Assembly (NCBI RefSeq): GCF_037042905.1
Contig: NC_087247.1
Location: 51,460,001-51,524,000, forward strand
DNA length: 64,000 nucleotides
Origin: Lytechinus pictus
Lineage: Eukaryota
Reading direction: 5' to 3'
The notes under the pieces were generated by a model. That model ran no database searches. It was given only the letters and a program-made list of their open reading frames with translations, and was not told where the DNA came from. Made by a program: the position numbers and the translations under genes. Shown piece after piece: positions 43,553 through 62,991 of this stretch (positions within the stretch are counted from its first letter, which is position 1; each line of letters opens with the position of its first letter).

Positions 43553-46500
43553 ATGATTCGGTATTGCCTGCTGATATTAGTTGGTTTTATTGGGTCTGCC
43601 GTGGGTCTTTTCAGCAACATGGGCCCAGCCGTAGATCTTTGGCTGTCCGCAGATGAAGTGTCTCGAATTTTAGGTACGTATATGAAAAATCACGTCTAGT
43701 GTATGCTTTGAGGTAGGAATTCATTTTGTTAAGTCTAATATGGTGATGTCTCAGATAGCTAGGCAGAAAGGCCACACTTTGAAATTGCCATTCTTTTTGT
43801 CATATAAAATACCTGTGAAATATTTTGTAAAGTTCACTGCATGTATTTCTGTTGTTTGAACCTATATGAGGGAGCTTAATTCAAAAGTTTAAAAAAGAAT
43901 GATGCCATTAAAACAATAACAATGGTACTAATTGTGTTAATTAAGGTCTGTTTGAAAATAGAAATAACCGACGATTAGAAAAGTTATGTGTCATAAGGCC
44001 AGTAATCAATACCGGTAAGGGCTAACTATACTATTTATTGTTATTTTGGCCAATTAGTATATGTTTTTTATGTGTTGTCTCATGATAAATGCATATTGTC
44101 AATTTTTTTCAATTTAGTAACTGTTTTTATTGCTGAAATTGATAAGGAAGCTAATAAAAAATGATAAAAGGATACCTTGCTAGAACTTCTCATGAAACAT
44201 CAAGTAATACAAGCTGAAGATATCGTTTCAAACATTATTTCCGTTTCCTATAAATTCTGATGACTGAGAAGATGTTTCCAAAGGTAGGCCGCCCAGTTAA
44301 GCGTCATGTTTAGGTGATTTTATTTGGTTTATTTTGTAAACAAAATCCAGATCTTGAGCCTATAAAGACTACCGTCTCCCCTCAAGAGATTAAATAAAAT
44401 CGATATTGGATCAGTTAATGTCTTTTTCTTGTGGAGGAAGTACACGCATTGTTACTATGAAAAGCGATTGATCTTCGTCGCCAGACTAGATCAGATAATC
44501 CTTTAAGAGTAGGTTCATTACCGATCTTAACGACTTCAGATGGGGGAGCAGACAATTGGTGGATACTGTAAAAGAAACACATTAGCCAGCAATGAAGATG
44601 AAGGTTGTGTAGACCCCTCCACCATTCAAGGCTTTAGCAGCGAGGTTAAGAATATTTAGTAAACATGATGTTTGTATTCGTGAGGTTTTGTTCGTCCACT
44701 CACCACATGTTCTACTTTCATTTAGTCTAATGCCATTCCGTCTAATAACCAGTTGATCCGATAGCCATTTAGTTCATATACCATTTAGTCTAATTGGAAT
44801 AAGTGTTAAATTGTGCAAAATGAATGAAAATGAAATGGATATTATTTAGACCAACTGGTTATGAGACGAAATGGTCAAAGACAAAATGGTGATTAGACGA
44901 AGTGATAATTGGACCAAATGGTTAATGGACCAAATGGTTGATATACGAAATGTTGATGGACGGAATGGCATATTAGACTCAATGACAGTAGACCATGTGG
45001 TGAGTGGACGAGTTGGCAGTTACTTTAGACGAATTGGAAATTTACCGCTATTCATTACACACAGTTAATAACAGACCACAGTGGTGGTCAATTTTTTCCC
45101 CATTTAACATTTTTAACGAAATTTGCATTTTGAGCTTTAGATAGTGCTTCTGATTCATATTCTTACGTTTTAACACCAATCTTCCAGATCCGGTATTAAA
45201 TTTCAAATCCTATATAATGCTATACCTCACCTTCGGGTCACTGTTACGATAATGACCGTGACGTTATTCTTACCTCCCGTAAACACTTTGACCTTAAATG
45301 ACCTTTGCATAAACTAGGAATGATGATCACAACAAACCCATGTGCGGGTATACTGCAAAGCTATATTCAGAATGAATATCCTCGGCCATATTTCTATTTT
45401 TGCTTTTACACCCCCCCCCCCCTCTTCCTCTCCCATTCCCTTTCCTTTTATATGTAATGATATATATTATACATGTGTTTATCAGTCTTCTGAATGCGTT
45501 CGATTGAATTCCGATTTAACTCTTTATTAGTTCTGTAACGTTAGTTGGTTCTGTAACGTACTTTTTAGCGCGAAAGCGAACAAATATGTATGCTATATTT
45601 GTTTTTCTTTTACATTCCACTATGTAAATTGAATGTTTGATATTGGCGAACAAGAGAAATGCCCCAAACCCTTTAACGGTAGAGAAGATGAAACAAAACG
45701 ATTCGATATTTCATCTTGTAAAAATGTTTTGTCTGATCAAACTTGTTGCCAACCGGAATAAGGAGAACAGAATGAAAAAGTGTAAAATCAATGAGCATGA
45801 TGAGCAGAAAAGAAGTCCGAATTATAACTTGTGTTTATTTTGCGAAATCTTTGATGAAAGGTTCAATTTAATTTCGTTCGTGAAGATGGAATCATAATAC
45901 CCCCTGGGCAGATCTCGAATGAAATTGGTTAGAGGGTTTAATATGTTTTGAATTAGAGCGAAAATTGGATTTAGGTGGGCTGGTACGGTAAGAGAAATTT
46001 GATTTTGAAGAATACATAGACTGTGAACCTATATATGCATGGAAGTCACTCCCCATAATTGTGTTTTTGTAACTTTAATTTTCATGGAAAAAAAAGGACT
46101 TTTTCCTTCATTGTATGATATGCAATATGAGATTTGTATAAAGTACATTTCTCCAAAATATTGAGTTGCTATCTTAAAATACTTTTTTAGTTTATATCAA
46201 GCTTTGATTTATGATGGAATAGTTTCTACCATTATCAGCGTGGATTAATTACTAAGGTGTTATCTTTATGAAAAGTGCCTATTTATGATTTTTATCAATT
46301 TTCATTTGCCACTATCTTATTTTTTTGTATTTAACAAAACAAGGTAACAAAAAGTTTAACAATAATATATTTGAAAAAAAAATAAAAATGAAATTCGTTG
46401 TAAGTTTTGTTTTGTGTACCCCTGTCGATTATAAATTTCTAATAGAAGTGATCATTAATTTTATGCAAGTTATATTTGAACAATTTAGTTTAATACATAT

Positions 46501-46732: not shown

Positions 46733-49700
46733 ACTTCGGCATATGGAATAAGATAATCACAAATAGTTTATTAAATGCCGTAGAAATAAAAATCTTTTAT
46801 TTCCACGGCATTTTCTAAACTATTTGTGATTATATATATATATATATAACGATATTACATTCCGCGTGTTGGACACAGATGAGATAAAAGAGGCAAAGAG
46901 GTAATGCATTGTTATAGTTCCAACAAAGTTTATTTCCAAGTATATATATATATATATATATTCATAAATAGCCTTTATACATTACAAGGAAATTTCAATG
47001 ATTAATACCTGTGTTTATCAGTATCTTGAATGTGTTCGATTTAATTCCGATTCGATTAATTCCGCAAAGTCTAATCCCAATTTTGATAATTGATTTTATT
47101 TATCTTTACCTCAAAGGGAGGCGTGTCTCTGAGCCTCTTTATATCATCCAAGATGGGTTGGCCAACCCTTCTATGTCCCCTTCGTTGTTGAGGATCAACA
47201 ATGATTCACTCTATGATCCGAACTTCATTGATCAAAAAACGAGATTTATTCTTCCTGCAAACATCGACTCACTGAAGATCTCTTGGCGAGCCCCTAAACC
47301 AGTAAGTATAACATATCAAGAACAAAAAAAATGAATGGTGAAGAAATAAGTATCAACCGAATGTACGTATATCATGTACCGTTCATCTGCAAAGTGCAAA
47401 TTCACAACTGTACTTTGCATTTTAAGCTTTATTATTAATATTTTCAGCAATATCAATTATATTTACTGACAACTTGTTGCTTTTCTTACGATGTTCTTGT
47501 ATCTCATACTCCAAAAGGCCTTAATGAATAAAGTTATCAATTTTAAAGTCCAGAGTAGTTGCAGTGCCTAATCTAAAATGTTACACTGTATGTTCATCAT
47601 TTGCCATGCTATACGTTGGCAACAGTTATTTATAATCTACTAATATGCTTTTCACACTGCACTTTTTTCCCTTAACCCCAGGAAATTGGTGGGGCTAAGG
47701 GGGGGGGGGGGTCTTAGCCCCACCAATTTCCCGGGGTTAAGCTTAGCCCACTTCGTTTTCACACTACGTTTTAACAAAGTGGGCTAGCACGGTAAATAGC
47801 ACGGTACTATCTGGCCCTGCAAAAAAGCAGGGTTAGCCGGCTTATTGTGGTGCTAGCACCACAATTGCGGTGCTAAGAGATGCAGTGTGAAACGAAACAG
47901 GGCTAAGCAAAAATGGGGCTAAGCATTAGCCAATCACAGAAGTCGAAATTGCACGTTAATCGCGCTCTGTATGGTAGAATAATCAATATTCATGAGCTGT
48001 GTGATTGCCCGGGGTTAAGGCTTAACCCCAGCTAAGCAAATAGTACGGGGTTAAGAAAGACAGTGTGAATCGAAAAAAAGATAGTATGGGGTTAAGGATA
48101 GTCCGGGGTTAAGGATAGTATATATGGGGTTAAGGAAATGCAGTGTGAAAAGCATATAACTGTTATCAAGTACTAACTAATCACTATCTCAAGCAAAGTT
48201 CAGTTTTCTCATTCTAATTTCATCTGGAGTTCAAGTTGTAAACGTGTATTATTCATAATCGTATATTTATTAGTGTAACTCTTTACTCCTTTTCGAGTTA
48301 TCGCCGTCTATTTATCTTTGATTCACAGTTGCATGATGAAGAAATAAATGATAATGTAATTTACATTTTTTTTTTTTTTTTTCACACTGGTTATTTGAAA
48401 TTAGACACCTCACGCTCCACCACTCGCTCCTCTTGGCACACTTTCAAACTGAAAATGAACATTAGTGATCTTCCATATATTATTTCCTGTAGACAGAACA
48501 TAACTAAATCAAACAAGTATTTCCTCAATACCCCTATAACTTTCAACACACTTTGGGCACACCGGTTATTGCAGTCGGCTTGTGAAGGATAACTTTTTTC
48601 TAAGTGGATACTGCACTTGGTCTTTGAAATATTGACATTCCATTATATGGCTAATCGTAGTTGAAATACGTATTTCTAAAGATTAGATCCAAAGATACGA
48701 CCGACAACACGCGATCATATTTTTAAACCAAATGAAAACCAGATGTGATGGGTGTTTTTGCCATTAAAACACTATGAGACAGACTACGAGTTGCTGACTA
48801 ATAGATACGAAAAATTGTATCGGGAGAGGGGAGGAAGAAGGACAGAGAAGGGGAAAAAATATATAAATTAACAGAAAGAGAGAAGGGGGAGAAAAGAGAT
48901 GGGAAGGGAGAAAGAGGGAGAGGGGTAGAGGCGGAAGAAGGAGGGAAGGAGAGAAAGATCACTGAATAAAATGATATATATTTCACGGAATCTCCACCTA
49001 ACATATTTGTATAACTTCCACATTTTCTAAGGGCTACGAAGCCCAACAAAAGAAAATATTCTTCGGCAACCCATCATTCTTATTTTCTGCTGAAAGGCGA
49101 AAGAAAAAGTTAAAAGAAGCAAATACAATGGTCACAATATTGGCTCATTTTATTATGTGCTGTTACGGGTGAAAAGAGCCGTAAATTGTAGTCCAAATGG
49201 ATGAAGCCATTCTTGCTTTGACTGAATTTCGTCACCCGTGACCTGGGCCTTTAATGGGCAGTGAATGGAGCAGTAATTCATAATTAGAACAAAATAAAGA
49301 ATAACACAACCAGTTGTAATTCTGCGTAACCACAGGAGGCATTTTGTTTGTTGACTAACAATACCACATAACTGTTATTCGGTTTTTGTATATCAAAAGT
49401 GTACCAGATTCCTTGTATTCTATGCAATTGGCACACCATCAATGCAATCCTGCTTCCTGGTATCAGGCAAGGGTGGTTTTTATGTTTTTTTTCTCTCATC
49501 AAAATATTGGGATTGAGATTAAATCTATTTAGATCCCATGCAGATAATATCAGCAGTTACATGTACTTCATTAGTCAATCCCAGTCCATAAAATATATTT
49601 ATTAGATGATGCAAGGTTTGGCATGGTGAGACAGAGATGTTATCAATGATAAAGTATGCAATATAGAGAGAGCATAGATATTGTTTCAGTTTTAGCACGC

Positions 49701-52700
49701 TACGCTAATCAGATAACTTGGTATGATAATTTCACAGTATAGTCTTCATTTACCACACTGCAAAAAAAACCCTCCGGTGTTGATTTACCACCACCCCGGA
49801 ATTATGTCCACAGACTCCACACCAGAGAAGTATTGAAACAACACCAGTTTTGAATCAAACCAATGCTGTTTTAATATTTATTGATGTTGTATAAACACGT
49901 ATATTTCATAAAGGAATTGCAACTGTTGTAACTTTGCCATAATGGCAACTACCGTGGTAACAGAGCTCAGCAGCCAATCAAAATCAAGGTTTCCATGGTA
50001 GTTGCCATAATGGCAAAGTTACAACAGTTGCAAGTCCTTTATGAAACGGGCTCCTGGTGTTAGACCAAAACCAAACTGGTGTTGTTTAACAATTATCTGG
50101 TGTAGACATGATATAGATTCCGGGCTGGAGGTAAATCGACACCGGAGTTTTTGCAGTGCATGTTTATTTTTTTCTATAGTTAATTTTATGTCTGGAAAAC
50201 ACTGTCCTTGAAGAATATATCAAGTATTTAATTGAGATATATGGAAAACGTAATCGACAAGACAAAAAAAATCAATTTACCCAATATTTGCTGACTAAGA
50301 GGTAGGAATTTATGCCAACTTCTTTGTCTCCCTTTATTTGTCTCCAGGCTATGGAGATTTCCCTTCCACCATTCCATTTGTCAATTTTAACTAATAAATT
50401 TTACCAGTTAATGTGACCCGTCATTTGATTGAATTGTTGATTAATGCAGAGTCATTCTTTCACATCGCATTCATTATGTTCAGTTTGGGCTTTTAGATCG
50501 AAATTCTTGAGAACATTATGGAATCTCAACAACATGTAAACGGGAAATAGTGTGTAGCACCTATTGAAGAATGAAGAATTTGGGGGTAATTCACTTAAAT
50601 AACTGCGCTATTCACGCTATATAAAAGCTGATTGTTATTCAGATACATCATCTTATCATATCTCCTATTACCAAAAGAAAATATTTTTTGAAATTTCGTA
50701 TTTTACTATTTCAATTCAACTGAATGTGAGACAATTGAAAACAACTTTTTAATAGTTGAAAAGCTTATCCATGCATTAGGTAACCTCACCCCCGTTGCAT
50801 ACCAGATAAAACCTCTGCAGAACACGACACATTTGTCATGAGTTTTGTCTAGTTAGCGAGCGAGCAAATAAAACATCTGCCATTATCACCAGATTATTGT
50901 TTTCGTCAACGGGGCTGTCCAAAAATCACGAAATCTGAAAAACTTTGTGACAGAGATCACCAAATGTATGATAATCATAGAACCAAAATAACAATGCAAA
51001 GGAGAAGAGAGAAATGGGGTACAAAATGACAGATCCAGACATTTAATTCAGTGGATCTAGTACGTGTCCCATCTTAAGTTGGAAGACTATTCCTAAATGG
51101 TGTTGAAATATGAATGCATAGGGGAAATTTTTTTCAAGATAATATTTTTTATGATTTCTGAGGGGGGGATATTCTTCAAATCCCATACAATTTGGGCTAA
51201 ACATTTCAGGAGAACCTTTCCTGCATGGTTATTGCGATCCAAATTCCTTTTGCTCAAGTAACCCTTCACAGAAAAATCAGTGAGAGTTCATGAACTCACG
51301 TAATAATTTCTCAAAGTTTTAGTTTTTTATTTTACTAGCCATGTAATGGTTTATGTCTAATGCTGCTGTCAAGCCCTCGGTCCATAAACGTATGTAAATG
51401 AATTGATTTTACGCATTTTTTTGCCTATATATATGAACTCTAATAAAGCCCTTAAAATAGGATACATACGTTGATTTGTTTATGTTTTATTTCATTTTTT
51501 TTGCTTTTTTTATATTTTGTATTCTTCAAACAATATTTTTACACTAAGAAAACATAGTTAGTTTGATTATAATACGTGATCTGGAGGTGAATGAAGAGTT
51601 TAGATTGAGCACCGTGTGTGTTGAAAGGATTGGAAGGTGGTAAACCATAACGAGCAAGTGTGTTTTGAGAGAGAAAAAAAAGCACATGCCACCTACGGAA
51701 GTAAACATACTGTTTTGAAATTTCATAAGGGCACATGAATATTAAAAAGGTGGTATGCTTATATAATCGCCATGACTACCAAGGGTGGTGGTGAAACAGC
51801 ATTGCCAACATGTACACAGTGTGCCAGTGTCATTCAATCCAGTTTGTGAAAAAGCAAGATTACACTGTGGAACGAATACACTGTATGTCAATTGTATGTT
51901 GAACCACACTTTGGGAATGTTTACCGTTATAAGAAAACATTGAATCCGATCGAACGTCACATTTTTTTATTTTTCGAGTCGACTATTAAGAACAAACTGG
52001 ATGTGAAACACCAGGTTTTTATAAATTTTGCCCAATACTCCATTTCTGGTCCCCTCGAAATTTTTGGCTCATCACGCTTTGTACAGCATCAGGAAAAAGA
52101 CAGGTCAAAATAAAAAAATCCAACCCATCGACCACCAGGAGTGTCCATAAAATGACCACAGTGTGCGATTAATTAAGAGTATACACCCACAATTTGTAAA
52201 ACTGTGGTAAAACTGTGATTTGGTATCATTCGTAAAATGAGTACATACAAAAATAGAAGCGAATTCTGTTTTATGTGATGATAATGTAAGGAATAACCAA
52301 TATACTATTTTTCTCAGTTTTACCATGGACCTATTCGTAATAGGTCCATGGTTTTACCATGCAAGTTGGTACCTAACCGATAACAAAGAGTTCTCACAGA
52401 AAATGCTTCATTATACCACAATCTGACAAACTGTTTTAGAATGATGCAATCCTCTTGTGACCTGTAAATTAGAAAATAAAATTGTATGTAGGCCTATCAA
52501 TCGCAAATGTAAGCATTGTACTCATCAGCTCACACAAACCATAACTACCAGTAGGTCCTTATGACTGGATCCCCATAATTTTCAACACTATGCCACGCAT
52601 TATCTTTATATATTTCATAGGGTATATTTAACTTATCTTTTTTGTGTGATTGATTTCCTCAGTTCCATTATACTTTCATGCAACTTCAATCAAGCGATCC

Positions 52701-55700
52701 TTCTCTCATGGGGCCACCATTACTCAGCATCACATTGGAAGATAGTATGCCAAACAATAACACAGGTATGTTTTCCTTCATTTTCCTCTTTCTTGGTAAT
52801 TAAAAAAAAATAGATTTATAAATTTCATGAAAAACTAATCTAACTAATACTATTTAAGAATAGACAAAAAAATAGGGCTCCTTGGGTGTGTATGCATTTT
52901 ATTTTCGTAGAGGTTTTCGTTGATTTTTTTTTTGTCCCAGCTAGATAGACGCCCTCTCCAAAAGTTATCAACGAATATCATTCACTCCAAACTACAGTTC
53001 TCACTAGCTACGTTCCCATCCATGTTCAAGCCAGTCCACTACCACTACTCCAGGGCTCCAGGTTCGGTTAGGAAACCGTTGATATCATATTTACTTCGTT
53101 CAGATTGAGCCCCTTTTTAGTAATATTGTAAATAACGTATAGCATGTGTAATGAGAAAAGAGTGGAGAAAATTGAATACTCCCCTCCCACACACACAATG
53201 AATTTGTTAGCTGTAGCCACCGGCATGGCAAAGGAGATATAGATGTTACCGTACTTTCGTATATCATGTATATGTACACACTCTAAAAACAGCGGAGAAA
53301 AAAAAATAACCCAATATTGGGTAAAAAGGGAACATGCATGTTTGCTGGGTATTTTTTTTCTCTCAATATTGGGCAAAATGCATCTCTGAAGGGTAAATTT
53401 CAACGCAACATTGCGTAAAAATTTACAAAAAAAATATTTGGTATCTTTCCCAACAAACATTCATGTTCCCATTTTACCCATGCAATATTGGGTAAACCTT
53501 TTTTATAGTGCATGTATAATATTTCTAAGCAATTAGTTAGAATGTTCCCTTCATCAAATGGCATGCTGATAGGACAATGCGTCAGATTTTTTTTTTATTA
53601 AAAGCTTTTTAAGTTGAAAATGGAATGAACAGTGACTTTATTTGCATCACATCAATTAAGAGGGGTAAGAGTGCATTAAAAAGAGAAAGGAAGAGATAAG
53701 TATTAAACCATGTTGATTCTTTCTTGGAAATATGGTGGCTCTGAAAAGAGCCGTTTGTAGTAAATATGGTAAAGACCAATTTACTTGGAGGTGGTGTACT
53801 TGGTGACAGCCTTGGTGCCCTCAGAGACGGCGTGCTTGGCCAATTCACCGGGGAGGAGGAGACGAACAGAGGTCTGGACCTCACGGCTGCTGATGGTGGA
53901 CTTCTTGTTGTACTGGGCAAGACGGGAAGCCTCACCGGCAATACGCTCGAAGACATCGTTGACGAAGCTGTTCATGATGGACATAGCCTTGCTTGAGATG
54001 CCAGTGTCGGGGTGAACCTGCTTCAGAACCTTGTAGATGTAGATTCCGTAGCTTTCCTTTCGCTTACGGCGACGGGTCTTGGAGACACCACTTGGGCGTC
54101 CCTTGGCCTTACCGGCCTTCTTTGCTCCCTTTCCGCTGGTTTGTTTGGCAGGCATGATGATTACTTGATTGTGTCGAGTAGATCAACTGAAGCTACAACG
54201 AACATCGCCCCTATTTATACGAACTCCCAAGACCGGATACGCTTGGGCGACGCTACTTTATATCGGTAAACTTCGCGCCAACCTCAATCCCGAGTACAGA
54301 TACAGAGGATCCAGTAGAACGAAAGACTGGTCGATATATTCAATGGGGAGAACCTTCGCGGGTGATAGACTCTTTTCACTGCTGTCGTAACCTTGGTCAG
54401 TACTTACAGATGATATGAAAATTTTCAGTGCAGAAACCAAAGTTTGACTATATACTTTTGAAGTATTCCCCCTGGATAAAGAATGTCGTGAAATGTGAAA
54501 CAAACCTAAAGTTGCGTACCACACTAATATGCTTATCAAAAGTTATTATTTTTATCGAGTGGTCGGTCATTTCTTACAGCTTTCAATTAAGCATTACTGT
54601 ATTCAGTGCCAAACTTCCGTTTTTCGATTTCATTATTGATATTTGGTAAATTTTCTTTTACCAACGTTAAGTGATTATCATTGATACCGACTCTTGGGAA
54701 AAATGTGTTTTCAAAAATAAAATCAAAATATATTAATATTATGAATTATACATACATTAATATATTTTTATGCAAATTTCAACTCATAAATCCAACATCT
54801 AGCCATATACATGTGCATGTATACCGATGCATAATATCCTACTTTATCATTTCCAACTGATGAATTATTGTGCGAGGTCTTCAATACCCTGTTATTTGAT
54901 AATGTGCTTATGGCAATTTATACTACCCTAAACCATCCGCTTATTAGAAGTTGCAAACAATTATTTTGCCAACTTTGAAGAAAACGAACCCAAAAGAATA
55001 ACCCAATTGTAAGTAATAATTTACCTAATAGCCATGTAAGAAAATCCATGCATGGTAGCAATATGATTTCACTGAGCAATGCATGATTTAACATGGATTG
55101 GTCGAATTATCTTTATAAAGTGATACCCAACTAATTAATATTCTCAAGTCATTGTGTGCCGATTTCAGATTTGTTCCAAACACACAGTATTATTTGTCTT
55201 CCCATGCAATGAAATGATGGTTGGGTTTTTGTTCAATACATTTTATAATAATTAAGATATGCTAAAAAGGAATCAAATTGTGAAACATAATATAATACGC
55301 CATTTTCAATCGCTTTGGTAATACTATGTTCAAGAGCGTCATTGTCTTAGGTTTTGAACATTATTATAGATAAACATGTTGGGAAGGTCACCGTATCTGT
55401 TCCTCGTTTATCACGATTGTGGTGAATTCTTAATTAATACAGTTGCTCCTCTCTCTTCTGGTCACTTGAACTTTTAAGAAGCATTGATGTTGTTGGTGGC
55501 GCCTGTTTACTTCATTGAACGTTGAGAGTTTAGCTGAGTATTTACAGAGCTTCACATTTTCTTTATAGAAGGTGAAGCCAAGGGGGGCCTGTAGTGGCTC
55601 GTTTGAAAGGAGTACGTTTATTTTATTGAAAAGCGCGGAATATGCAAATAGATCTCTCTATTGTTCTTCTCCAGTGGCCCTGATCGATTTCGGTGTACAT

Positions 55701-58700
55701 CCCAGCCAGGTAAGGTATAGCATTGCGGGGCTACGTTAACGAACTTATTGATCGCTTTTTGGTACTTTTTGATCACCCGTGGGGGTATATATAGCGGAGC
55801 GCCAGTTTCAAAAGCTAAGTTCGTTTTCAGTTCTCAACGACGACAACAACTAAACTAAATCATCATGTCTGGACGTGGTAAGGGCGCTAAATCTAAGAGC
55901 AAGGCCAAGAGCCGATCAAGCCGTGCAGGGCTTCAGTTCCCTGTCGGTCGTGTCCACCGTTTCCTCCGCAAGGGAAACTATGCCAACCGTGTTGGTGCTG
56001 GAGCTCCAGTCTACCTGGCTGCCGTTCTCGAGTACCTGACTGCTGAGATCCTCGAGCTCGCCGGCAACGCCGCCCGCGACAACAAGAAGAGCAGGATCAT
56101 CCCCCGTCACCTTCAGCTCGCCATCCGCAACGATGAGGAGCTCAACAGGCTGATGAGCGGAGTAACCGTCGCCCAGGGTGGTGTTCTCCCCAACATCCAG
56201 GCTGTCCTCCTCCCCAAGAAGAAGTAAATGCTTCATCTTGCCTTAAAAACTCAAACGGCTCTTTTCAGAGCCACCAAATCAACAAGAAAGAAATTCAATT
56301 AGAAAATCTCTTTAAACACATCGCATTAGTTAATTCATAATACTTTTCTGTCTTTATCTTCACTACCAATCAAGTGTTTGGAAAATTATAGTAGACTTAT
56401 GAGGTTAACGAAATTGTCTGAGGTTAAGAAACCATCATGAGGGGTATAAGAGTGGTCCCTCATCCACTCCCTTACATCTGTTTCTTACCACTTAAGTGTA
56501 CGCATTAATCAGAGTGCTCATTCTAATAAATTGTGCACTAGAAACTCTGAAATATTTTGATAGACCTGCAAGAAAAAAATTTATATTTTCCACTCTTCAG
56601 GACCAACTCCATTAAATAATAATAATTGCAACAGTCAATACCCATTCTGATTACCTAAGTGAATCAAATCTGTAAACTGTGTCCCAAATTCCATACCACA
56701 AACCATCGAAATCAATTATCATGATATATATATATAGGCTTATATATAGCGCATAACGTCCCTATGCGCTTACAAAGGACTTGGAATAAAATCATGCCAG
56801 GTACCAATTCACGTCACCCGAGCAATGTGCTAAGGAAATTACGCCATGGCTGGGATTCGAACCCATGACCCTCTGTTTCAAAGTCAGAAGACTAATCCAC
56901 TGGGCCACAACGCTCTACAAATATCACTCAGTATACAATGCCCCAAATAAATGGACAAAAAAATAAATCCCTTTACCATGCAAGGTTGTTATACTGCATA
57001 GGCGGATTCAGGGGGCCGAGGGGTACGCCCCCCCCCCTATTGGCGATGCAAAAAAGAAAAAAGGGGGGAAAGAAAAAGAAAGAAATGAGGGAAAAGAGAG
57101 GAGAAAAAAAGAAGGGGAAACAAAAGAGGAGGAAGACGAGTAAATAAAATAAGATGAGGGGAAGACTATGTTTTTTTAAATAATCATGTCACTATATAAA
57201 TTTTCGCTCGCGCTCGCATTGCCTATAGGTGATTTACATATCTTGCTCAATATGAAGTCAATATACAAAACATATTCATTTTCATTATGTTGGTTGGTTT
57301 ACAAATTTATTTTGGAAAAGTGCTGTGTAAAAAATGTCTGTTTTATGGTCTGAATATTAACATTTTCTGATCGCGCTGCACGCTCGCAAAATTTTATTTG
57401 TCAGGTACCTATTATTTTCCTGTATTCCGTAAAGTTCTCCCTATTTAGGTCAGATTGTCAAAACGTATGAGCTAGCGCTGCACGCTCGCATTTTGATTGG
57501 TTAGTTATGTATATATAGGTCAATATTAATTCTATAACAGAACTACTTAAAAATCCCTATTTCATGACAGTTTATCAGAAATTTCGGCTCGCGATTTGCG
57601 CTCTCATTGATTGTTGAAAACATATTAACTCATGCATCTCATTCATAATTACATAAGTGCTTTAAAAGTCCAGTTTTCAGGCCATAATATTAATAGATTT
57701 CGCGCTCTCATTAGGCATATTAGATTAATAAATAAGATGGAATATTGACAAGTTTCATCTCGCGCTTGGGAAGAGAAATAGGAAGATAGTCATCATTTTC
57801 ATATGATTACATAATGTTCTTAGAATGTCCCGGTCCTATGTCAAAACTCAAAGTAATAATAATGAAACATATCAGCTCTTTTTTAACTGTGATCCACATC
57901 CACCTTACAATTTTCCTACAAAGTGTTTGAAATACAGAGCTTAGATTGACCCTTTTTCAGATCGGAATATCAAATATTTTAAGCTCGCGCTTCGGGCTCG
58001 CTTTACTGATTTTCATGATAAAAAAGGTATTTAGAATGTCCAGATTCTAGGTCAAAATCTGAAACACGCAGGCATGTTTATTCAGATACGCAGCTTGTTC
58101 TCTATCTAAATCATTATCCAGTTCCAGATCACAATATAAAAAAAATCTGCTCGCGCTTTGCCCTCGCATTATTAAAGGTCAAGTCCACCTCAGAAAAATG
58201 TTGATTTGAATCAATAGAGAAAAATCAGACAAGCACAATGCTAAAAATTTCATCAAAATCGGATGTAAAATAAGAAAGTTATGACATTTCAAAGTTTCGC
58301 TTATTTTTAACAAAATATTTATATGAACGAGCCAGTTACATCCAAATTAGAGAGTCGATGATGTCACTCACTCACTATTTCTTTTGTTTTTTATTGTTTG
58401 AATTATACAATATTTCAATTTTGACGAATTTGACGATTAGGACCTCATTGCCTGAACCACAAAATGTTAAAATAATGGAATTCTACGTGTTCAGGGAGGA
58501 ATGAAACTTCATTTCACATGACAATGACGAGAAAATCAAAATATTTCATATTTCATATAATAAAATACAAAAGAAATAGTGAGTGAGTGATGTCATCGGT
58601 TCCCTCATTTGCATACCGACCGGGATGCGCATATAACTGTTTTGTGAAATGAAGCGAAACTTTAAAATGTCATAACTTTCTTATTTTACATCCGATTTTG

Positions 58701-61700
58701 ATGAAATTTTCAGTGTTATGCTCGTTGAATTTTTCTCTTTTTATTCAAATCAGGTTTTTGTTGGGGTGGACTTGTCCTTTAATGTAGGGAGATTTCCAAT
58801 TACTCATCCTTTTCGTGATTTACAAACCTGAATAGAGTGTCTCATTTTTAGGTGTAAATCTTTTTCTGCTCGCGCTTCGCGCTCGCATCAATTATTTAGT
58901 TATATACTTATCCTTTTTACGATTACAAAAAGTGCTTGGAATTTCCATTCTTCAGGAAATAATGTCAACATTTTCAGCTCGCGCTTCGCGCTCGCATTAT
59001 TTGATTGATGAAATATGTAACGTCTTCACGGCTAACTGCAAGCAGCCGTTAACAGATTTGTTTTATCAGATCAAAACGTATATAAAAAAAATTTGCTTGC
59101 GCTTCGCGTTCGCAGTAATTATTTTAGTTGGATACACATCTTGTTTAGGATCACACATATTGCCCAGAAATTTAAGAAAAAATACATGAAATAAAAAAAA
59201 ATAGCTCGCGCTTCGCACTATTTAAATAAGGCTTATGAGAGTATTATATATTTATGTTGATTTATAAGAATAAAGCTTAGAAGTGACTATTAGCACTACC
59301 CCTCAAAAGAAACAAACAAAATCAACTTCGAGCGGCCGATCGGGGAAAATGTGGCTGAAAAAAAAATCCGCCCCCCCCCCCCCCCATTATTGGCGAAGGC
59401 TGGATCCGCCCCTGTACTGGGCAAAATTCATATAGAAACGACATGCAGTATAGAATGACCCAGAACGTACTTCCGCTCTGGTGAATTAATTCTGTTGTAT
59501 TTCAGATTTAGAATACGATTTCTTGGGAAATTGATGTTCTCCCTTATTAGTTGGCCTTTTAATCCCAACAATATAATGCAGGGTCAGGTTTTAAATTTTT
59601 TAATGTCAGAATTTGATATACTTAATACTAATCATGAGATCTCGCAGTGTATGGATATTATTCAAACGGGGAAACAAAATATTATTCACTTTTTAAAGAA
59701 TGACAAGGTTATCAGTCGAAGTGGGGGAGGTATACCAAAAATAACGGATAATATGCCCGTGGTCCTGTACAATACAAAAGAAAACACAATGAATTCCATG
59801 ACTGAATGTATGGCATTCCACGTACAAAAAGTTACAATTCATTTTCAATAACAATTGTCTCTGTTTGATAATTATGTGTACCCCCAGGTTTGGAAAGAAA
59901 TTCGAATATACTTTGTATTTTCCCTTTTTTCTGGAGTTTGGCATTTTACCACCTTCACTGTCCTTATATAGGCCTACTTACTGGGGCATATTCCTGTTTA
60001 CTTCTTTAAGTTATTAATCCTGTCATAGGCTGTCTCGCTATATTAAGTGAAATGTAAAAGGGTGTATTTTTATACCCCTTTTGCACGCAGCGATAACAAA
60101 ATTAATTAATTATAATCTAGGTTATGGGATGATGATAACGGATAATGAAAGTGATATGGGAAGGGATAATGAATGCTGTAATATAATGACACTTTGTATT
60201 TCTATCAATTCTAGAATTTCGGATGGATTTTCCTTGTACTGGTGAGAGGACTGGCATAGCATCAGTAAACGTCATTCTGAGAATTCGACACTTTAAGAGC
60301 GGTCTCGACATCCCTGCATCACCTATACATCTTAGTTTCGACAAACAGTGTGTGGAAGGTATGACAGTCCATCATCTCTCCTGGCCTCCATCGGTGAATT
60401 TGATAGACACTCTTCATTCGAAAATGTTCTTATCATTACAGAGCATAAAACTGTTTTTGTTTACTCTTGTGTATTCAACATTTTTGCCTGGGATAAAAGT
60501 GTTCCGATTTGTTATTTTGTAAACTATTTTTTTTAACTTTTCTGCCCAACTTTGGCAAAAGCAAGCAAGTGGCACATGAGTCAATTTGAGTTATTGTTGT
60601 TTCTGAAAAACCCTTTGTATGTTGCACGTTCAGTCAAAATTTTGGGAAGAAATGAGCGTTCTATGGGAAGATATTGAAGAAAATATGCTGTTAAATTGCA
60701 TTGACGCCTGTGTAAATGACGAACACACTAGCTCATTTACAACAAATGATACTTTTGTAAGTTGCTTCATTTTGCCAAAGTACGGCAGTATTACAAATAA
60801 TTTCATAACTAACAAAATAGTCTTAAATAACTTTTCCATTATCTTTGAATGAGCGTACAAATACCTTATTTGAATACGATTTCTTGAGAACATGAAGTAT
60901 TGCACTCATCATAATTTGCTTCATTCTTCAGTAAGTTTTCAGTTGTTCATTTTTTTTCATCAGCGCCCACTTGTGAGCCTCGTTGTGCAAATGGAGGTGT
61001 CTGTAATCAGCTTGGACGATGTGACTGTGCCGAGGGATTCTATGGTCATTCTTGCAGAATCAGTGAGTAAAAATGGGCCCTAGCTAAATAAACACTTTCC
61101 ACTTTAGTTTTTAGATTCTGGCGGTTTTATTTGTTTGTTCCCGATCTACATGGCAAAGTTGGCTAAATCAATATATTCAACACGATCACTATATCATTGG
61201 TAGAGCAAACCATATCATAGGTAGAACAAACTTTTCTCATACAGTTCGATAAATATATTAGTTTAAATATTGCATTTCTCATGAACATTGTAAAAATAAA
61301 TAGGGCCTATCATGAATACCCCGATCTTAAACATAGAATACAACTGGGGGAAAGGAAGCTTCTCAAAGATGCTCGGCAATGTCGACTATTTTTTTATACG
61401 AATGTTAATTGAATAGTCATACATTAATGTTTCATTATGATTTCTCCAGACCGTTTTTGGTGAATTAATGTCATCACTTTCTGATTATGTTTTGAAAAGT
61501 ATTCTGCATACCACACTGTTACAACTCGGGAACCTGTGTAGCTCCGGGTGTGTGCGAGTGCAAGAAAGGATTTATTGGAGATCGGTGTCAAAAAGGTAAG
61601 CTCAGCATAAATTCCATATTTTTCTTTCTTTTTCCCCCCAAAAAAAATTGGCTGGTGAGGTAAAAAAAAAACCACTTAATTCAGGTCATCAATTCTGAAT

Positions 61701-62527
61701 TAGTTAATCGAGAAAAATATATTCCATCGTTTGCCTTTATTTTGTAGAAAATGGGTTTATACTATTATGATGAAGAAAAAGAAGAAGGAAGGAGAAGAAA
61801 AAGGGGGAAATTACATCGGTGTTTTCACTCCTCGATGTACTGAAGATTCAAGAACAGAGTACAAAACGTATTGTCAAATGCCCGCAAAATTAAAAAGAAG
61901 AACTAACAAGTCTATCGAAAAGTGGTGAACCCGAACAGCAGTCCTAGTTTAAAAGGTGATGAAAAATTGCAAATGCATCCGTTTGTCCAAGATCAAGGAA
62001 TAAACTGCTGTTTTTATTTTCGACAAACGGGTATATTTTGACAACACATTTACTATTATCATGGACCTATAGGTCCATGCTATTATTGAATCCTCCACTG
62101 ATACGTCGCTGAGCGATAGCAAACGCTAGCAAAACTTTGTTTCTTTGACAGAATGCGCTTTTATGATATTTTTTTCCTGAAAAAAAATGAAATAAAGATT
62201 TCGTATATGAAAGCAAAGTCTTGTTGTATTAGGAAATCGATATCCACTGGCTAGCGTGCATGATGGATTGAGCATTGTTTTAATTGAAATCGCCACTGCG
62301 AGATATATTTACCATTTCAAGCCAATGCTTCTCTCATCTATCATGTCTATACAGCCTATTGTGTATTAAGTGTAAACAAGACAGTGAAAATTGAGAAATA
62401 TTCTTGAACTTTCCTTATATTTTCTTTATAGCTATTTGCAAAGACGATTGTAATGGTCATGGATACTGCTATAAACCTGGAAGCTGCTACTGCTATCGAG
62501 GGTGGACGGGACCAAAATGTGACAAAC
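43553..62527 (+). CDS. WIF1: Wnt inhibitory factor 1 / shifted-like secreted protein (signal peptide, WIF domain, at least 2 EGF repeats); 3' partial
   Basis: Exons 43553-43673 ([18 protein letters not shown]...[15 protein letters not shown]), 47117-47301 (LYIIQDG...[14 protein letters not shown]), 52663-52765 ([19 protein letters not shown]), 60215-60358 ([13 protein letters not shown]...KQC), 60964-61062 ([31 protein letters not shown]) and 62432-62527 ([31 protein letters not shown]) are all in phase. WIF followed by EGFs separates it from RYK. No stop codon is reached in the window. Confidence 0.9.
44690..45046. mobile_element. Left-truncated copy of the 28726-29127 MITE family
   Basis: Colinear from TTCGTCCACTCACCAC to GGACGAGTTGGCAGT and ending TTTACC. 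Confidence 0.75.
46753..46833. repeat. 81-bp imperfect palindrome between (TA)n tracts
   Basis: ATAATCACAAATAGTTTA..AAATGCCGTAGAAATAAAA pairs with TTTTATTTCCACGGCATTT..TAAACTATTTGTGATTAT; (TA)n at about 46698-46728 and 46831-46848. Confidence 0.75.
47644..48156. mobile_element. PIF/Harbinger-like MITE
   Basis: TAA|TATGCTTTTCACACTGCA...TGCAGTGTGAAAAGCATA|TAA with many internal GGGGTTAAG / GGGCTAAG motifs. Confidence 0.85.
49756..50158. mobile_element. EnSpm/CACTA-like MITE with a nested hairpin MITE (49904-50056)
   Basis: CA|CACTGCAAAAA...TTTTTGCAGTG|CA (2-bp TSD); inner arms TTTCATAAAGGAATTGCAACTGTTGTAACTTTGCCAT and ATGGCAAAGTTACAACAGTTGCAAGTCCTTTATGAAA. Confidence 0.75.
52324..52350. mobile_element. 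27-bp palindrome with 7-bp TSD (putative P-superfamily footprint or mini-element)
   Basis: GTTTTAC|CATGGACCTATTCGTAATAGGTCCATG|GTTTTAC. Confidence 0.65.
53279..53510. mobile_element. EnSpm/CACTA-like MITE just downstream of H2B
   Basis: CA|CACTCTAAAAA...TTTTTATAGTG|CA with internal (ACC)CAATATTGGGTAAA motifs. Confidence 0.65.
53718..53755 (-). terminator. H2B histone 3' stem-loop plus U7 histone downstream element
   Basis: Minus strand reads AACGGCTCTTTTCAGAGCCACCA-tatttc-CAAGAAAGA (stem-loop 53737-53752, HDE 53718-53726), the canonical sea urchin histone processing signal. Confidence 0.97.
53781..54155 (-). CDS. H2B: Histone H2B, sea urchin late type (H2B-2-like), intronless, replication-dependent
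   Basis: 124-aa [26 protein letters not shown]...[33 protein letters not shown]...AVTKYTTSK, with an upstream TATA and a 3' stem-loop plus HDE. Confidence 0.99.
54211..54255 (-). promoter_or_regulatory. H2B promoter: TATA box and possible Pax2/5/8 paired-domain site
   Basis: TATAAATAG at 54219-54211 (minus strand), about 56 nt upstream of the ATG. Just upstream, GCGTCGCCCAAGCGTATCCGG loosely resembles the Pax5 3' half-site AAGCGTRAC. Confidence 0.7.
55642..55793 (+). promoter_or_regulatory. H2A promoter: octamer and TATA box
   Basis: ATGCAAAT at 55642-55649 and TATATATA at 55786-55793, about 72 nt before the ATG. Confidence 0.65.
55865..56227 (+). CDS. H2A: Histone H2A, sea urchin late type (H2A-2-like), C-terminally short (120 aa)
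   Basis: [35 protein letters not shown]...[16 protein letters not shown], with an upstream TATA and a 3' stem-loop plus HDE. Confidence 0.99.
56254..56291 (+). terminator. H2A histone 3' stem-loop plus U7 histone downstream element
   Basis: AACGGCTCTTTTCAGAGCCACCA-aatcaa-CAAGAAAGA (stem-loop 56257-56272, HDE 56283-56291). Confidence 0.97.
56735..56916 (-). mobile_element. tRNA-derived SINE with an L2-type tail, internally short
   Basis: Minus strand GAGCGTTGTGGCCCAGTGGATTAG...GGGTTCGAATCCCAGCCATGG (A and B boxes), ending GTAAGCGCATAGGGACGTTATGCGCTATATA. Confidence 0.7.
56997..59414 (+). mobile_element. hAT-like GGCGGATCC family element with a nested Kolobok MITE
   Basis: CATAGGCGGATTCAG...TGGATCCGCCCCTG; colinear with 6861-9030; TACTG on both flanks. 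Confidence 0.8.
58176..58778 (-). mobile_element. Kolobok-like MITE family 2
   Basis: TTAA|AGGTCAAGTCCACC...GGTGGACTTGTCCT|TTAA; the empty site GCATTATTAATGTAGG is visible at 2891-2906. Confidence 0.88.
62060..62079. mobile_element. 20-bp perfect palindrome with 7-bp TSD (putative P-superfamily footprint or mini-element)
   Basis: CTATTAT|CATGGACCTATAGGTCCATG|CTATTAT. Confidence 0.65.
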
Positions 62528-62991
62528 GTAAGTTCAGTAACCCTATACAAACTTAAGGCCCGCGGGCATTAAGGATCACAACACCAGGAGATTTTCATAG
62601 CATTTGATTAATGCATGGAATCCCATCCCCTCGAAGTTATCAATGATTCATCTCTTTTGAAAATTTTACAAAGATCTACCAAAATTGTGTATCGTATTCT
62701 AAACTCTAAATTTAAAAAATGCAAATAAATTTTTAAAAGTGAATAAAAAATGAACTGTAGCTAAGACCCGGATTTATTATTGGTTTGAAATGCTATCCCA
62801 TTGCCCACCCCCTAAAAAAATCCTTTTTATAACCATGGAGAAGTGAAAACTACCGATTTTGATAAGTAATTTTATTTTGACTTTCGGCAAAAGACTAATT
62901 ATCATTGGTAATAAGTAGGAGGGAAAGGATGACATAACGATGACTAATACGTCAGTTCGTCGTATAGTTTATAACAATAGATTGTGTTTTT

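What the first reader, a model, noticed from the sequence alone, without database searches (positions are those of the whole stretch)
52766..60214. Divergent late histone H2B/H2A pair nested inside WIF1 intron 3, splitting the WIF domain
Seen: WIF1 exon 3 (ends 52765, phase 1) and exon 4 (starts 60215, phase 1) flank two intact histone genes with their own TATA boxes, stem-loops and HDEs, 1.7 kb apart head to head. Known: sea urchin late histone genes are dispersed divergent H2A-H2B or H3-H4 pairs. Inference: hosting such a pair inside a developmental Wnt/Hedgehog regulator is unusual. H2B runs antisense to WIF1 and H2A sense, so transcriptional interference or shared enhancers could couple cell-cycle state with WIF1 output.
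Basis: partly seen in the sequence, partly recalled or inferred. Interest (0 to 1): 0.75.

Follow-up and report, generated by a model that had tools for sequence, protein, structure and literature searches.

The report
Histone gene pair inside WIF1 intron
Two intact histone genes (H2B and H2A) sit back to back inside an intron of this sea urchin's Wnt-inhibitor gene WIF1, as they do in three other urchin species that split about 250 million years ago; nothing found here links them to WIF1 regulation.

Summary
The window is Lytechinus pictus. Seven GT-AG exons reproduce residues 1-282 of the RefSeq WIF1-like protein exactly. Intron 3 (52766-60214, phase 1) lies inside the WIF domain.

The intron holds an intact H2B (53781-54155, minus) and an intact 120-aa H2A (55865-56227, plus), 1709 bp apart head to head. 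Each has a TATA box, a histone stem-loop above Rfam's gathering score, and a CAAGAAAGA downstream element.

The same pair, in the same orientation and the same intron, is present in L. variegatus, S. purpuratus and Diadema setosum. That dates the nesting to about the Permian-Triassic boundary. It is absent from the same intron in a brittle star and a crinoid. dN/dS between orthologues is 0.05-0.17, so these are not dead orphons.

Apart from one 61-bp weak match, only the histone genes and 60-120 bp of their promoters align between L. pictus and S. purpuratus in this intron. This gives no support for shared enhancers. Coupling to WIF1 remains speculation.

All three genes are already annotated in RefSeq. 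An earlier scan note, untested here, reports H3/H4 pairs nested in other host genes of this genome. This is a well-supported, fairly ordinary nested-gene case.

The parts
43553..43673 (+). WIF1 exon 1 (coding part, starts at the ATG)
   Evidence: Exact match to XP_063953403.1 residues 1-40; GT donor
47117..47301 (+). WIF1 exon 2 (start of the WIF domain)
   Evidence: Exact spliced reconstruction
52663..52765 (+). WIF1 exon 3 (WIF domain, residues 103-136; ends in phase 1)
   Evidence: 100% tblastn match; AG acceptor and GTATGT donor
52766..60214 (+). WIF1 intron 3 (7449 nt), host of the histone pair
   Evidence: The orthologous intron is 6.9 kb in L. variegatus, 4.4 kb in S. purpuratus and 4.1 kb in D. 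setosum
53713..53757 (-). H2B 3' processing signal: stem-loop at 53737-53752 and downstream element CAAGAAAGA at 53718-53726
   Evidence: Rfam RF00032, 38.3 bits against a gathering score of 34; sequence read
53781..54155 (-). Late-type histone H2B gene, 124 aa, intronless, antisense to WIF1
   Evidence: 100% identical protein in L. variegatus, 96% in S. purpuratus; dN/dS 0.08-0.16
54212..54219 (-). H2B TATA box (TATAAATA on the minus strand), conserved in all five pairs compared
   Evidence: alignment
54156..55864 (.). Spacer of 1709 bp between the two ATGs; only the promoter-proximal 60-120 bp at each end is conserved
   Evidence: Spacer length varies from 1430 to 2567 bp among species
55642..55649 (+). 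Octamer ATGCAAAT (ATTTGCAT on the H2B-sense strand), about 220 bp upstream of the H2A ATG; present at the matching place in L. variegatus and S. purpuratus
55786..55793 (+). H2A TATA box
55865..56227 (+). Late-type histone H2A gene, 120 aa, ends LLPKKK, sense to WIF1
   Evidence: The 120-aa form is conserved in L. variegatus, S. purpuratus and D. setosum; dN/dS 0.05-0.13
56252..56296 (+). H2A 3' processing signal: stem-loop at 56257-56272 and downstream element CAAGAAAGA at 56283-56291; lies in sense within the WIF1 pre-mRNA
   Evidence: Rfam RF00032, 39.6 bits
60215..60358 (+). WIF1 exon 4 (end of the WIF domain)
   Evidence: Pfam WIF profile positions 90-131; exact reconstruction
60964..61062 (+). 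WIF1 exon 5 (EGF repeat)
61500..61595 (+). WIF1 exon 6 (EGF repeat)
62432..62531 (+). WIF1 exon 7 (EGF repeat); the last exon lies beyond the window

Best explanation
This is a working pair of replication-dependent, late-type sea urchin histone genes of the type RefSeq names H2A.2.2, with its H2B partner. Each gene has its own TATA promoter and its own stem-loop plus downstream element for U7/SLBP-dependent 3' end formation.

The pair entered a pre-existing phase-1 intron inside the WIF-domain coding region of WIF1. This happened before diadematoid and camarodont urchins split, about 250 million years ago, and it has stayed there since.

Most likely the three genes are independent transcription units. 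WIF1 is spliced across the pair. The nesting persists passively, because any rearrangement that removed the pair would risk breaking the host gene. It is probably not kept because the histones regulate WIF1.

Shown here: gene integrity, the signals, position, orientation, conservation in four species, and purifying selection. Inferred: expression, late timing, independence from WIF1, and the passive reason for persistence.
For: Structure and signals.

Host gene model: it reproduces the RefSeq protein exactly across the intron.

Conservation: the same pair lies in the same orientation in the orthologous intron of L. variegatus, S. purpuratus and D. setosum. All eight orthologous stem-loops score above Rfam's gathering score. 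The intron exists without histones in Amphiura filiformis and Anneissia japonica, so the intron is older than the insertion. The Euechinoidea crown age straddles the Permian-Triassic boundary (PMC8940180).

Selection: dN/dS is 0.05-0.17 between orthologues.

Independence from WIF1: apart from one 61-bp weak match, only the transcription units and 60-120 bp of promoter are conserved between L. pictus and S. purpuratus or Diadema, while intron and spacer lengths vary freely. Diadema has a second, near-identical pair that is not inside any gene.

Class: the genes lie outside the ~7.3-kb early tandem repeats and are closer to other dispersed copies (92-94% aa) than to early copies (88%). RefSeq names the H2A 'late histone H2A.2.2'. 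A reviewed Swiss-Prot H2A of exactly 120 aa is 97% identical to the S. purpuratus copy (name masked).
Against: About 250 million years of unchanged position and orientation is also what a functional link would predict, so passive retention is an inference.

The H2A 3' processing signal lies in sense inside the WIF1 pre-mRNA and could in principle cut it.

An older RefSeq model of L. pictus WIF1 (XP_054751261.1, 174 aa) starts only in exon 4. At one time, therefore, the annotation pipeline did not join the exons across this intron.
Confidence: 0.7

Rival explanations
1. Regulatory coupling. Transcription of the antisense H2B and sense H2A in S phase interferes with WIF1 elongation, or the three genes share enhancers. 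WIF1 output would then track proliferation.
For: The arrangement and orientation are conserved in four species over about 250 million years. H2B is antisense to the host, so polymerases would collide if both genes are active in one cell.
Against: Apart from one 61-bp weak match, no non-coding sequence in the intron aligns between L. pictus and S. purpuratus beyond the histone units and their proximal promoters. Intron and spacer lengths drift. Diadema runs a near-identical pair outside any host gene. An earlier scan note reports other late histone pairs in unrelated host genes (untested here). There are no expression data.
Confidence: 0.12
2. S-phase-gated attenuation. The complete stem-loop and downstream element of H2A, in sense within intron 3, is recognised by SLBP and U7 snRNP on nascent WIF1 pre-mRNA. 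The transcript is cut before exon 4 is made, lowering WIF1 in cycling cells.
For: The signal is complete and in sense. It is retained in sense in all four species. It lies 0.7-3.9 kb upstream of exon 4.
Against: The signal is needed for H2A itself, so its conservation says nothing about WIF1. All four RefSeq models join exon 3 to exon 4. No reads could be laid.
Confidence: 0.07
3. An inert orphon pair or an assembly artefact: dead histone copies, or misplaced sequence, inside the intron.
Against: Four independent assemblies agree. The ORFs are intact, dN/dS is 0.05-0.17, and all promoter and 3' signals are conserved.
Confidence: 0.02

Closest known systems
Late H2A-2.2 / H2B-2.2 gene pair of Psammechinus miliaris (Kemler and Busslinger 1986, Mol Cell Biol 6:3746; title seen in the reference list of PMC8857922; the paper itself is not held)
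   Same: Both are low-copy late-type H2A/H2B pairs of a camarodont urchin. RefSeq names the nested H2A 'late histone H2A.2.2' in S. purpuratus and D. setosum. A reviewed Swiss-Prot H2A of exactly 120 aa is 97% identical to the S. purpuratus nested copy.
   Different: The Swiss-Prot name was masked, so the identification with H2A.2.2 is an inference. I could not read the paper. I do not know whether the genomic context (WIF1) or the orientation of that pair was reported.
H3/H4 late histone pair nested in the last intron of an SLC46 transporter gene of this same genome (earlier scan note s1-323361)
   Same: It is also a divergent replication-type histone pair inside an intron of an unrelated host gene, also annotated in a sister species.
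   Different: The histone types and the host differ. I did not test that note. The depth of conservation shown here (back to Diadema) is not stated there.
Vertebrate divergent H2A-H2B pairs with a shared bidirectional promoter (my own knowledge)
   Same: Head-to-head H2A/H2B with TATA boxes, an octamer, and stem-loop 3' ends.
   Different: The spacer here is 1.4-2.6 kb and mostly unconserved, with separate proximal promoters, rather than one compact shared promoter of a few hundred bp. Here the pair sits inside another gene.
Sea urchin early (alpha) histone tandem repeats
   Same: Same protein families and the same stem-loop and CAAGAAAGA 3' signals.
   Different: Early genes are in ~7.3-kb tandem quintet repeats on many unplaced contigs. 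They are only 88% (H2A) and 86% (H2B) identical in protein, and about 75% in DNA, to the nested genes.

Membership tests
Replication-dependent (stem-loop) core histone genes | Intronless ORF with a core histone fold | tested here: met
   PF00125 at 70.5 and 61.6 bits (cutoff 26.4); PF16211 for H2A; uninterrupted ORFs
Replication-dependent (stem-loop) core histone genes | Conserved 3' stem-loop shortly after the stop codon | tested here: met
   RF00032 at 38.3 and 39.6 bits, gathering score 34; also met in all three other species
Replication-dependent (stem-loop) core histone genes | Purine-rich histone downstream element for U7 snRNA | tested here: met
   CAAGAAAGA lies 10 nt after each stem-loop; U7 pairing itself was not tested
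Replication-dependent (stem-loop) core histone genes | Non-polyadenylated, S-phase-coupled mRNA | not testable with these tools
Sea urchin late histone genes | Low copy, outside the early tandem repeat, sequence of the late type | tested here: met
   Single locus on chromosome-scale contig C3. 92-94% aa identity to three other dispersed H2A copies against 88% to the early repeat copies
Sea urchin late histone genes | Expression from blastula onward and in adult tissues | not testable with these tools
   No reads could be laid
WIF1 (host gene) | N-terminal WIF domain followed by EGF repeats | tested here: met
   PF02019 at residues 29-182, 58.8 bits (cutoff 25); EGF families at 185-309. RefSeq names it WIF1 in S. 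purpuratus
WIF1 (host gene) | Binds Wnt and inhibits signalling | not tested
   No experiment or paper on the urchin protein was examined
Nested (intronic) gene | Guest genes lie wholly inside one intron of the host | tested here: met
   Guest units span 53713-56296; the intron spans 52766-60214
Nested (intronic) gene | Host mRNA is spliced across the guests | tested here: inconclusive
   The in-silico splice gives the exact RefSeq protein, and four species' models join the same exons. No junction reads were seen

The most novel reading that the evidence does not exclude
The nesting is functional. In cycling cells, either antisense H2B transcription or SLBP/U7 cleavage at the sense-oriented H2A 3' signal cuts short nascent WIF1 transcripts. 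A secreted Wnt antagonist would then be turned down whenever a cell replicates its DNA, through a link fixed in euechinoids for about 250 million years.
Probability: 0.07. Interest if true: 0.7.

Novelty: new member of a known kind. Interest (0 to 1): 0.3.

Why it matters
Nested genes are common. The host gene and this histone type are both known, and all three genes are already annotated in RefSeq for four urchins.

This gives a clean dated case of a replication-dependent histone pair living inside a developmental signalling gene. A complete histone 3' processing signal sits in sense within the host pre-mRNA. It would be a convenient natural test of whether such signals or S-phase transcription affect a host gene. 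Without expression data it remains an ordinary, well-documented nested-gene case.

Tried and rejected
Expression and the splice junction are therefore unconfirmed by reads.
- Run search. The look-up of sequencing runs gave no holder on record as RNA. Four small runs of the same species hold 12-13% of the words, about the size of two histone mRNAs. That is suggestive only, and I do not count it.
- Transcript contigs. Exact-protein look-ups for the S. purpuratus, L. variegatus and Diadema H2A returned only genome assemblies.
- Papers. Kemler and Busslinger 1986 and Marzluff et al. 2006 are not held. No paper holds WIF1, sea urchin and late histone together. 'Late histone H2A.2.2' appears only in fish papers.
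- Structure. Models of H2A were poor (pLDDT 45 and 49). I used the Swiss-Prot fold search only for its identity and length columns, and all names were masked.
- H2A tree. It did not resolve the nested copies as one clade. L. pictus paralogues are closer at silent sites than the S. purpuratus orthologue (dS 0.19 against 0.39). This suggests some gene conversion, so orthology rests on synteny.
- Promoter scan. The bacterial-type scan is irrelevant here.
- Further WIF1 orthologues (cidaroid, sea star, sea cucumber) could not be reached; the word-based protein searches found none.
Full report
**What is there**

Between 53.7 and 56.3 kb the window holds two uninterrupted ORFs: H2B at 53781-54155 on the minus strand (124 aa) and H2A at 55865-56227 on the plus strand (120 aa). 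Both match the core-histone Pfam family well above its cutoff, and H2A also matches the H2A C-terminal family.

Each gene is followed by a histone 3' stem-loop that passes Rfam's gathering score: 38.3 and 39.6 bits against 34. Ten bases after each stem-loop comes the sea urchin downstream element CAAGAAAGA. Each gene has a TATA box about 60-80 bp upstream of its ATG. The two ATGs are 1709 bp apart, head to head. No other Rfam family passes threshold anywhere in the window.

**The host gene**

A phmmer search with the exon-4 peptide found a 311-aa WIF1-like protein. Later searches showed it to be from Diadema setosum, and found the L. pictus RefSeq protein XP_063953403.1 on a contig of the same length as the one that carries the window's own H2A.

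Seven exons with canonical GT-AG boundaries translate exactly to residues 1-282 of that protein. The Pfam WIF domain covers residues 29-182, and the intron falls in codon 137, so it splits the domain.

**Conservation**

The called genes around the orthologous WIF1 genes show the same three-gene arrangement in L. variegatus, S. purpuratus and D. setosum. Local tblastn places the pair between the exon 3 and exon 4 equivalents in each species, with H2B antisense and H2A sense. All stem-loops in these species pass Rfam's threshold.

The intron exists at the same position in the brittle star Amphiura filiformis and the crinoid Anneissia japonica, but holds no histone gene there. So the intron is older than the insertion.

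Diadema (Aulodonta) and the camarodonts (Carinacea) span crown Euechinoidea, whose age straddles the Permian-Triassic boundary (PMC8940180). The nesting is thus about 250 million years old. Four independent assemblies rule out a misassembly.

**Are the genes alive?**

Between orthologues dN/dS is 0.05-0.17, and the promoters' TATA boxes, cap regions and 3' signals are conserved. This rules out an inert orphon.

The H2A is 120 aa and ends LLPKKK in all four species, whereas the other dispersed L. pictus H2A genes have 124-125 aa with a further short tail. RefSeq calls it 'late histone H2A.2.2'. A reviewed Swiss-Prot H2A of exactly 120 aa is 97% identical to the S. purpuratus copy (name masked). 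I infer that this is the type cloned from Psammechinus miliaris in 1986, in a paper whose title reports embryonic and adult expression (reference seen; paper not held).

The genes lie outside the ~7.3-kb early tandem repeats and are closer to the other dispersed copies than to the early ones.

**Expression**

I could not show expression. The run search listed no holder on record as RNA.

**Is there a link to WIF1?**

Nothing found supports one.
- Between L. pictus and S. purpuratus, only the two transcription units and 60-120 bp of proximal promoter align in the whole intron, apart from one 61-bp weak match. Against Diadema, only the units align.
- Intron length (4.1-7.4 kb) and spacer length (1.4-2.6 kb) drift freely.
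- Diadema has a second, near-identical pair beside a BCD1-like gene and outside any host. It shares only the transcription units with the nested pair.
If true, nesting is a habit of dispersed histone pairs rather than something special to WIF1.

The simplest reading is three independent genes, with the arrangement frozen because rearrangements inside WIF1 would be harmful. Coupling by interference, or by cleavage of WIF1 pre-mRNA at the sense-oriented H2A signal, is not excluded. I give these 0.12 and 0.07.

It needs a correction. In this genome two other late-type H2B/H2A pairs are tandem on one strand (C18 and C7, 2.3 kb apart). One pair is divergent, with its two genes 9.8 kb apart, and two H2B genes stand alone among the scored matches. 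The nested pair is the only close divergent one seen.

**Verdict**

The regulatory idea is untested and unsupported. All three genes are annotated in public records, and no paper I could search describes the nesting. It is a new, well-dated member of a known kind of arrangement, of modest interest.

Noticed in passing
window 56140-56227; L045 10001-10363; L049 15916-16278; L043 27135-27497; L047 10001-10363: The nested H2A is a 120-aa form ending LLPKKK, without the last 4-5 tail residues. The other L. pictus late-type H2A copies have those residues. The form is conserved in L. variegatus, S. purpuratus and D. setosum, and in a second Diadema pair, so it is an old variant and not a recent truncation. 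Only the Lytechinus copies also carry NRLMSGVTV in place of NKLLGGVTI.
   Followed up: partly
window 54270-54300 (minus strand, about 125 bp upstream of the H2B ATG): S. purpuratus and both Diadema pairs have an ATTTGCAT octamer upstream of H2B. At the aligned place the two Lytechinus species have a degenerate version (ATCTGTAC / ATCTGCAC). Near the promoters, the only intact octamer in L. pictus is the one at 55642, close to H2A.
   Followed up: partly
G000 C18:24509138-24512177 and C7:3932858-3935923: Two other late-type H2B/H2A pairs of this genome are tandem on the same strand, H2B first, 2.3 kb apart. They are not divergent.
   Followed up: no
L047 (D. setosum OZ188202.1), L046 and L048 (D. 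antillarum): Diadema has a second divergent H2B/H2A pair with the same 120-aa H2A, beside a BCD1/zf-HIT gene and not inside WIF1. H2B silent-site divergence from the nested pair is only 0.02. This points to a recent copy or to gene conversion. Only the transcription units are shared.
   Followed up: partly
window 60223 onward (Met in WIF1 exon 4): An older RefSeq model of L. pictus WIF1 (XP_054751261.1, 174 aa) starts at the methionine in exon 4, just downstream of the histone pair. It could be an annotation artefact of the long intron, or a hint of transcripts that start inside intron 3.
   Followed up: no
H2A coding sequences, window 55865-56227 against G000 C7:3935567: The nested H2A is closer at silent sites to a paralogue in the same genome (dS 0.19) than to its positional orthologue in S. 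purpuratus (dS 0.39). This suggests gene conversion among dispersed late histone genes.
   Followed up: partly
G000 contigs C57, C66, C76, C83, C95, C101, C106, C145, C150, C153, C155 and others: Early histone repeats with a period of about 7.3-7.45 kb fill many unplaced contigs; more than 140 H2A copies were scored.
   Followed up: no
window 57051-57131: A purine-rich, low-complexity tandem stretch lies in intron 3, downstream of H2A.
   Followed up: no
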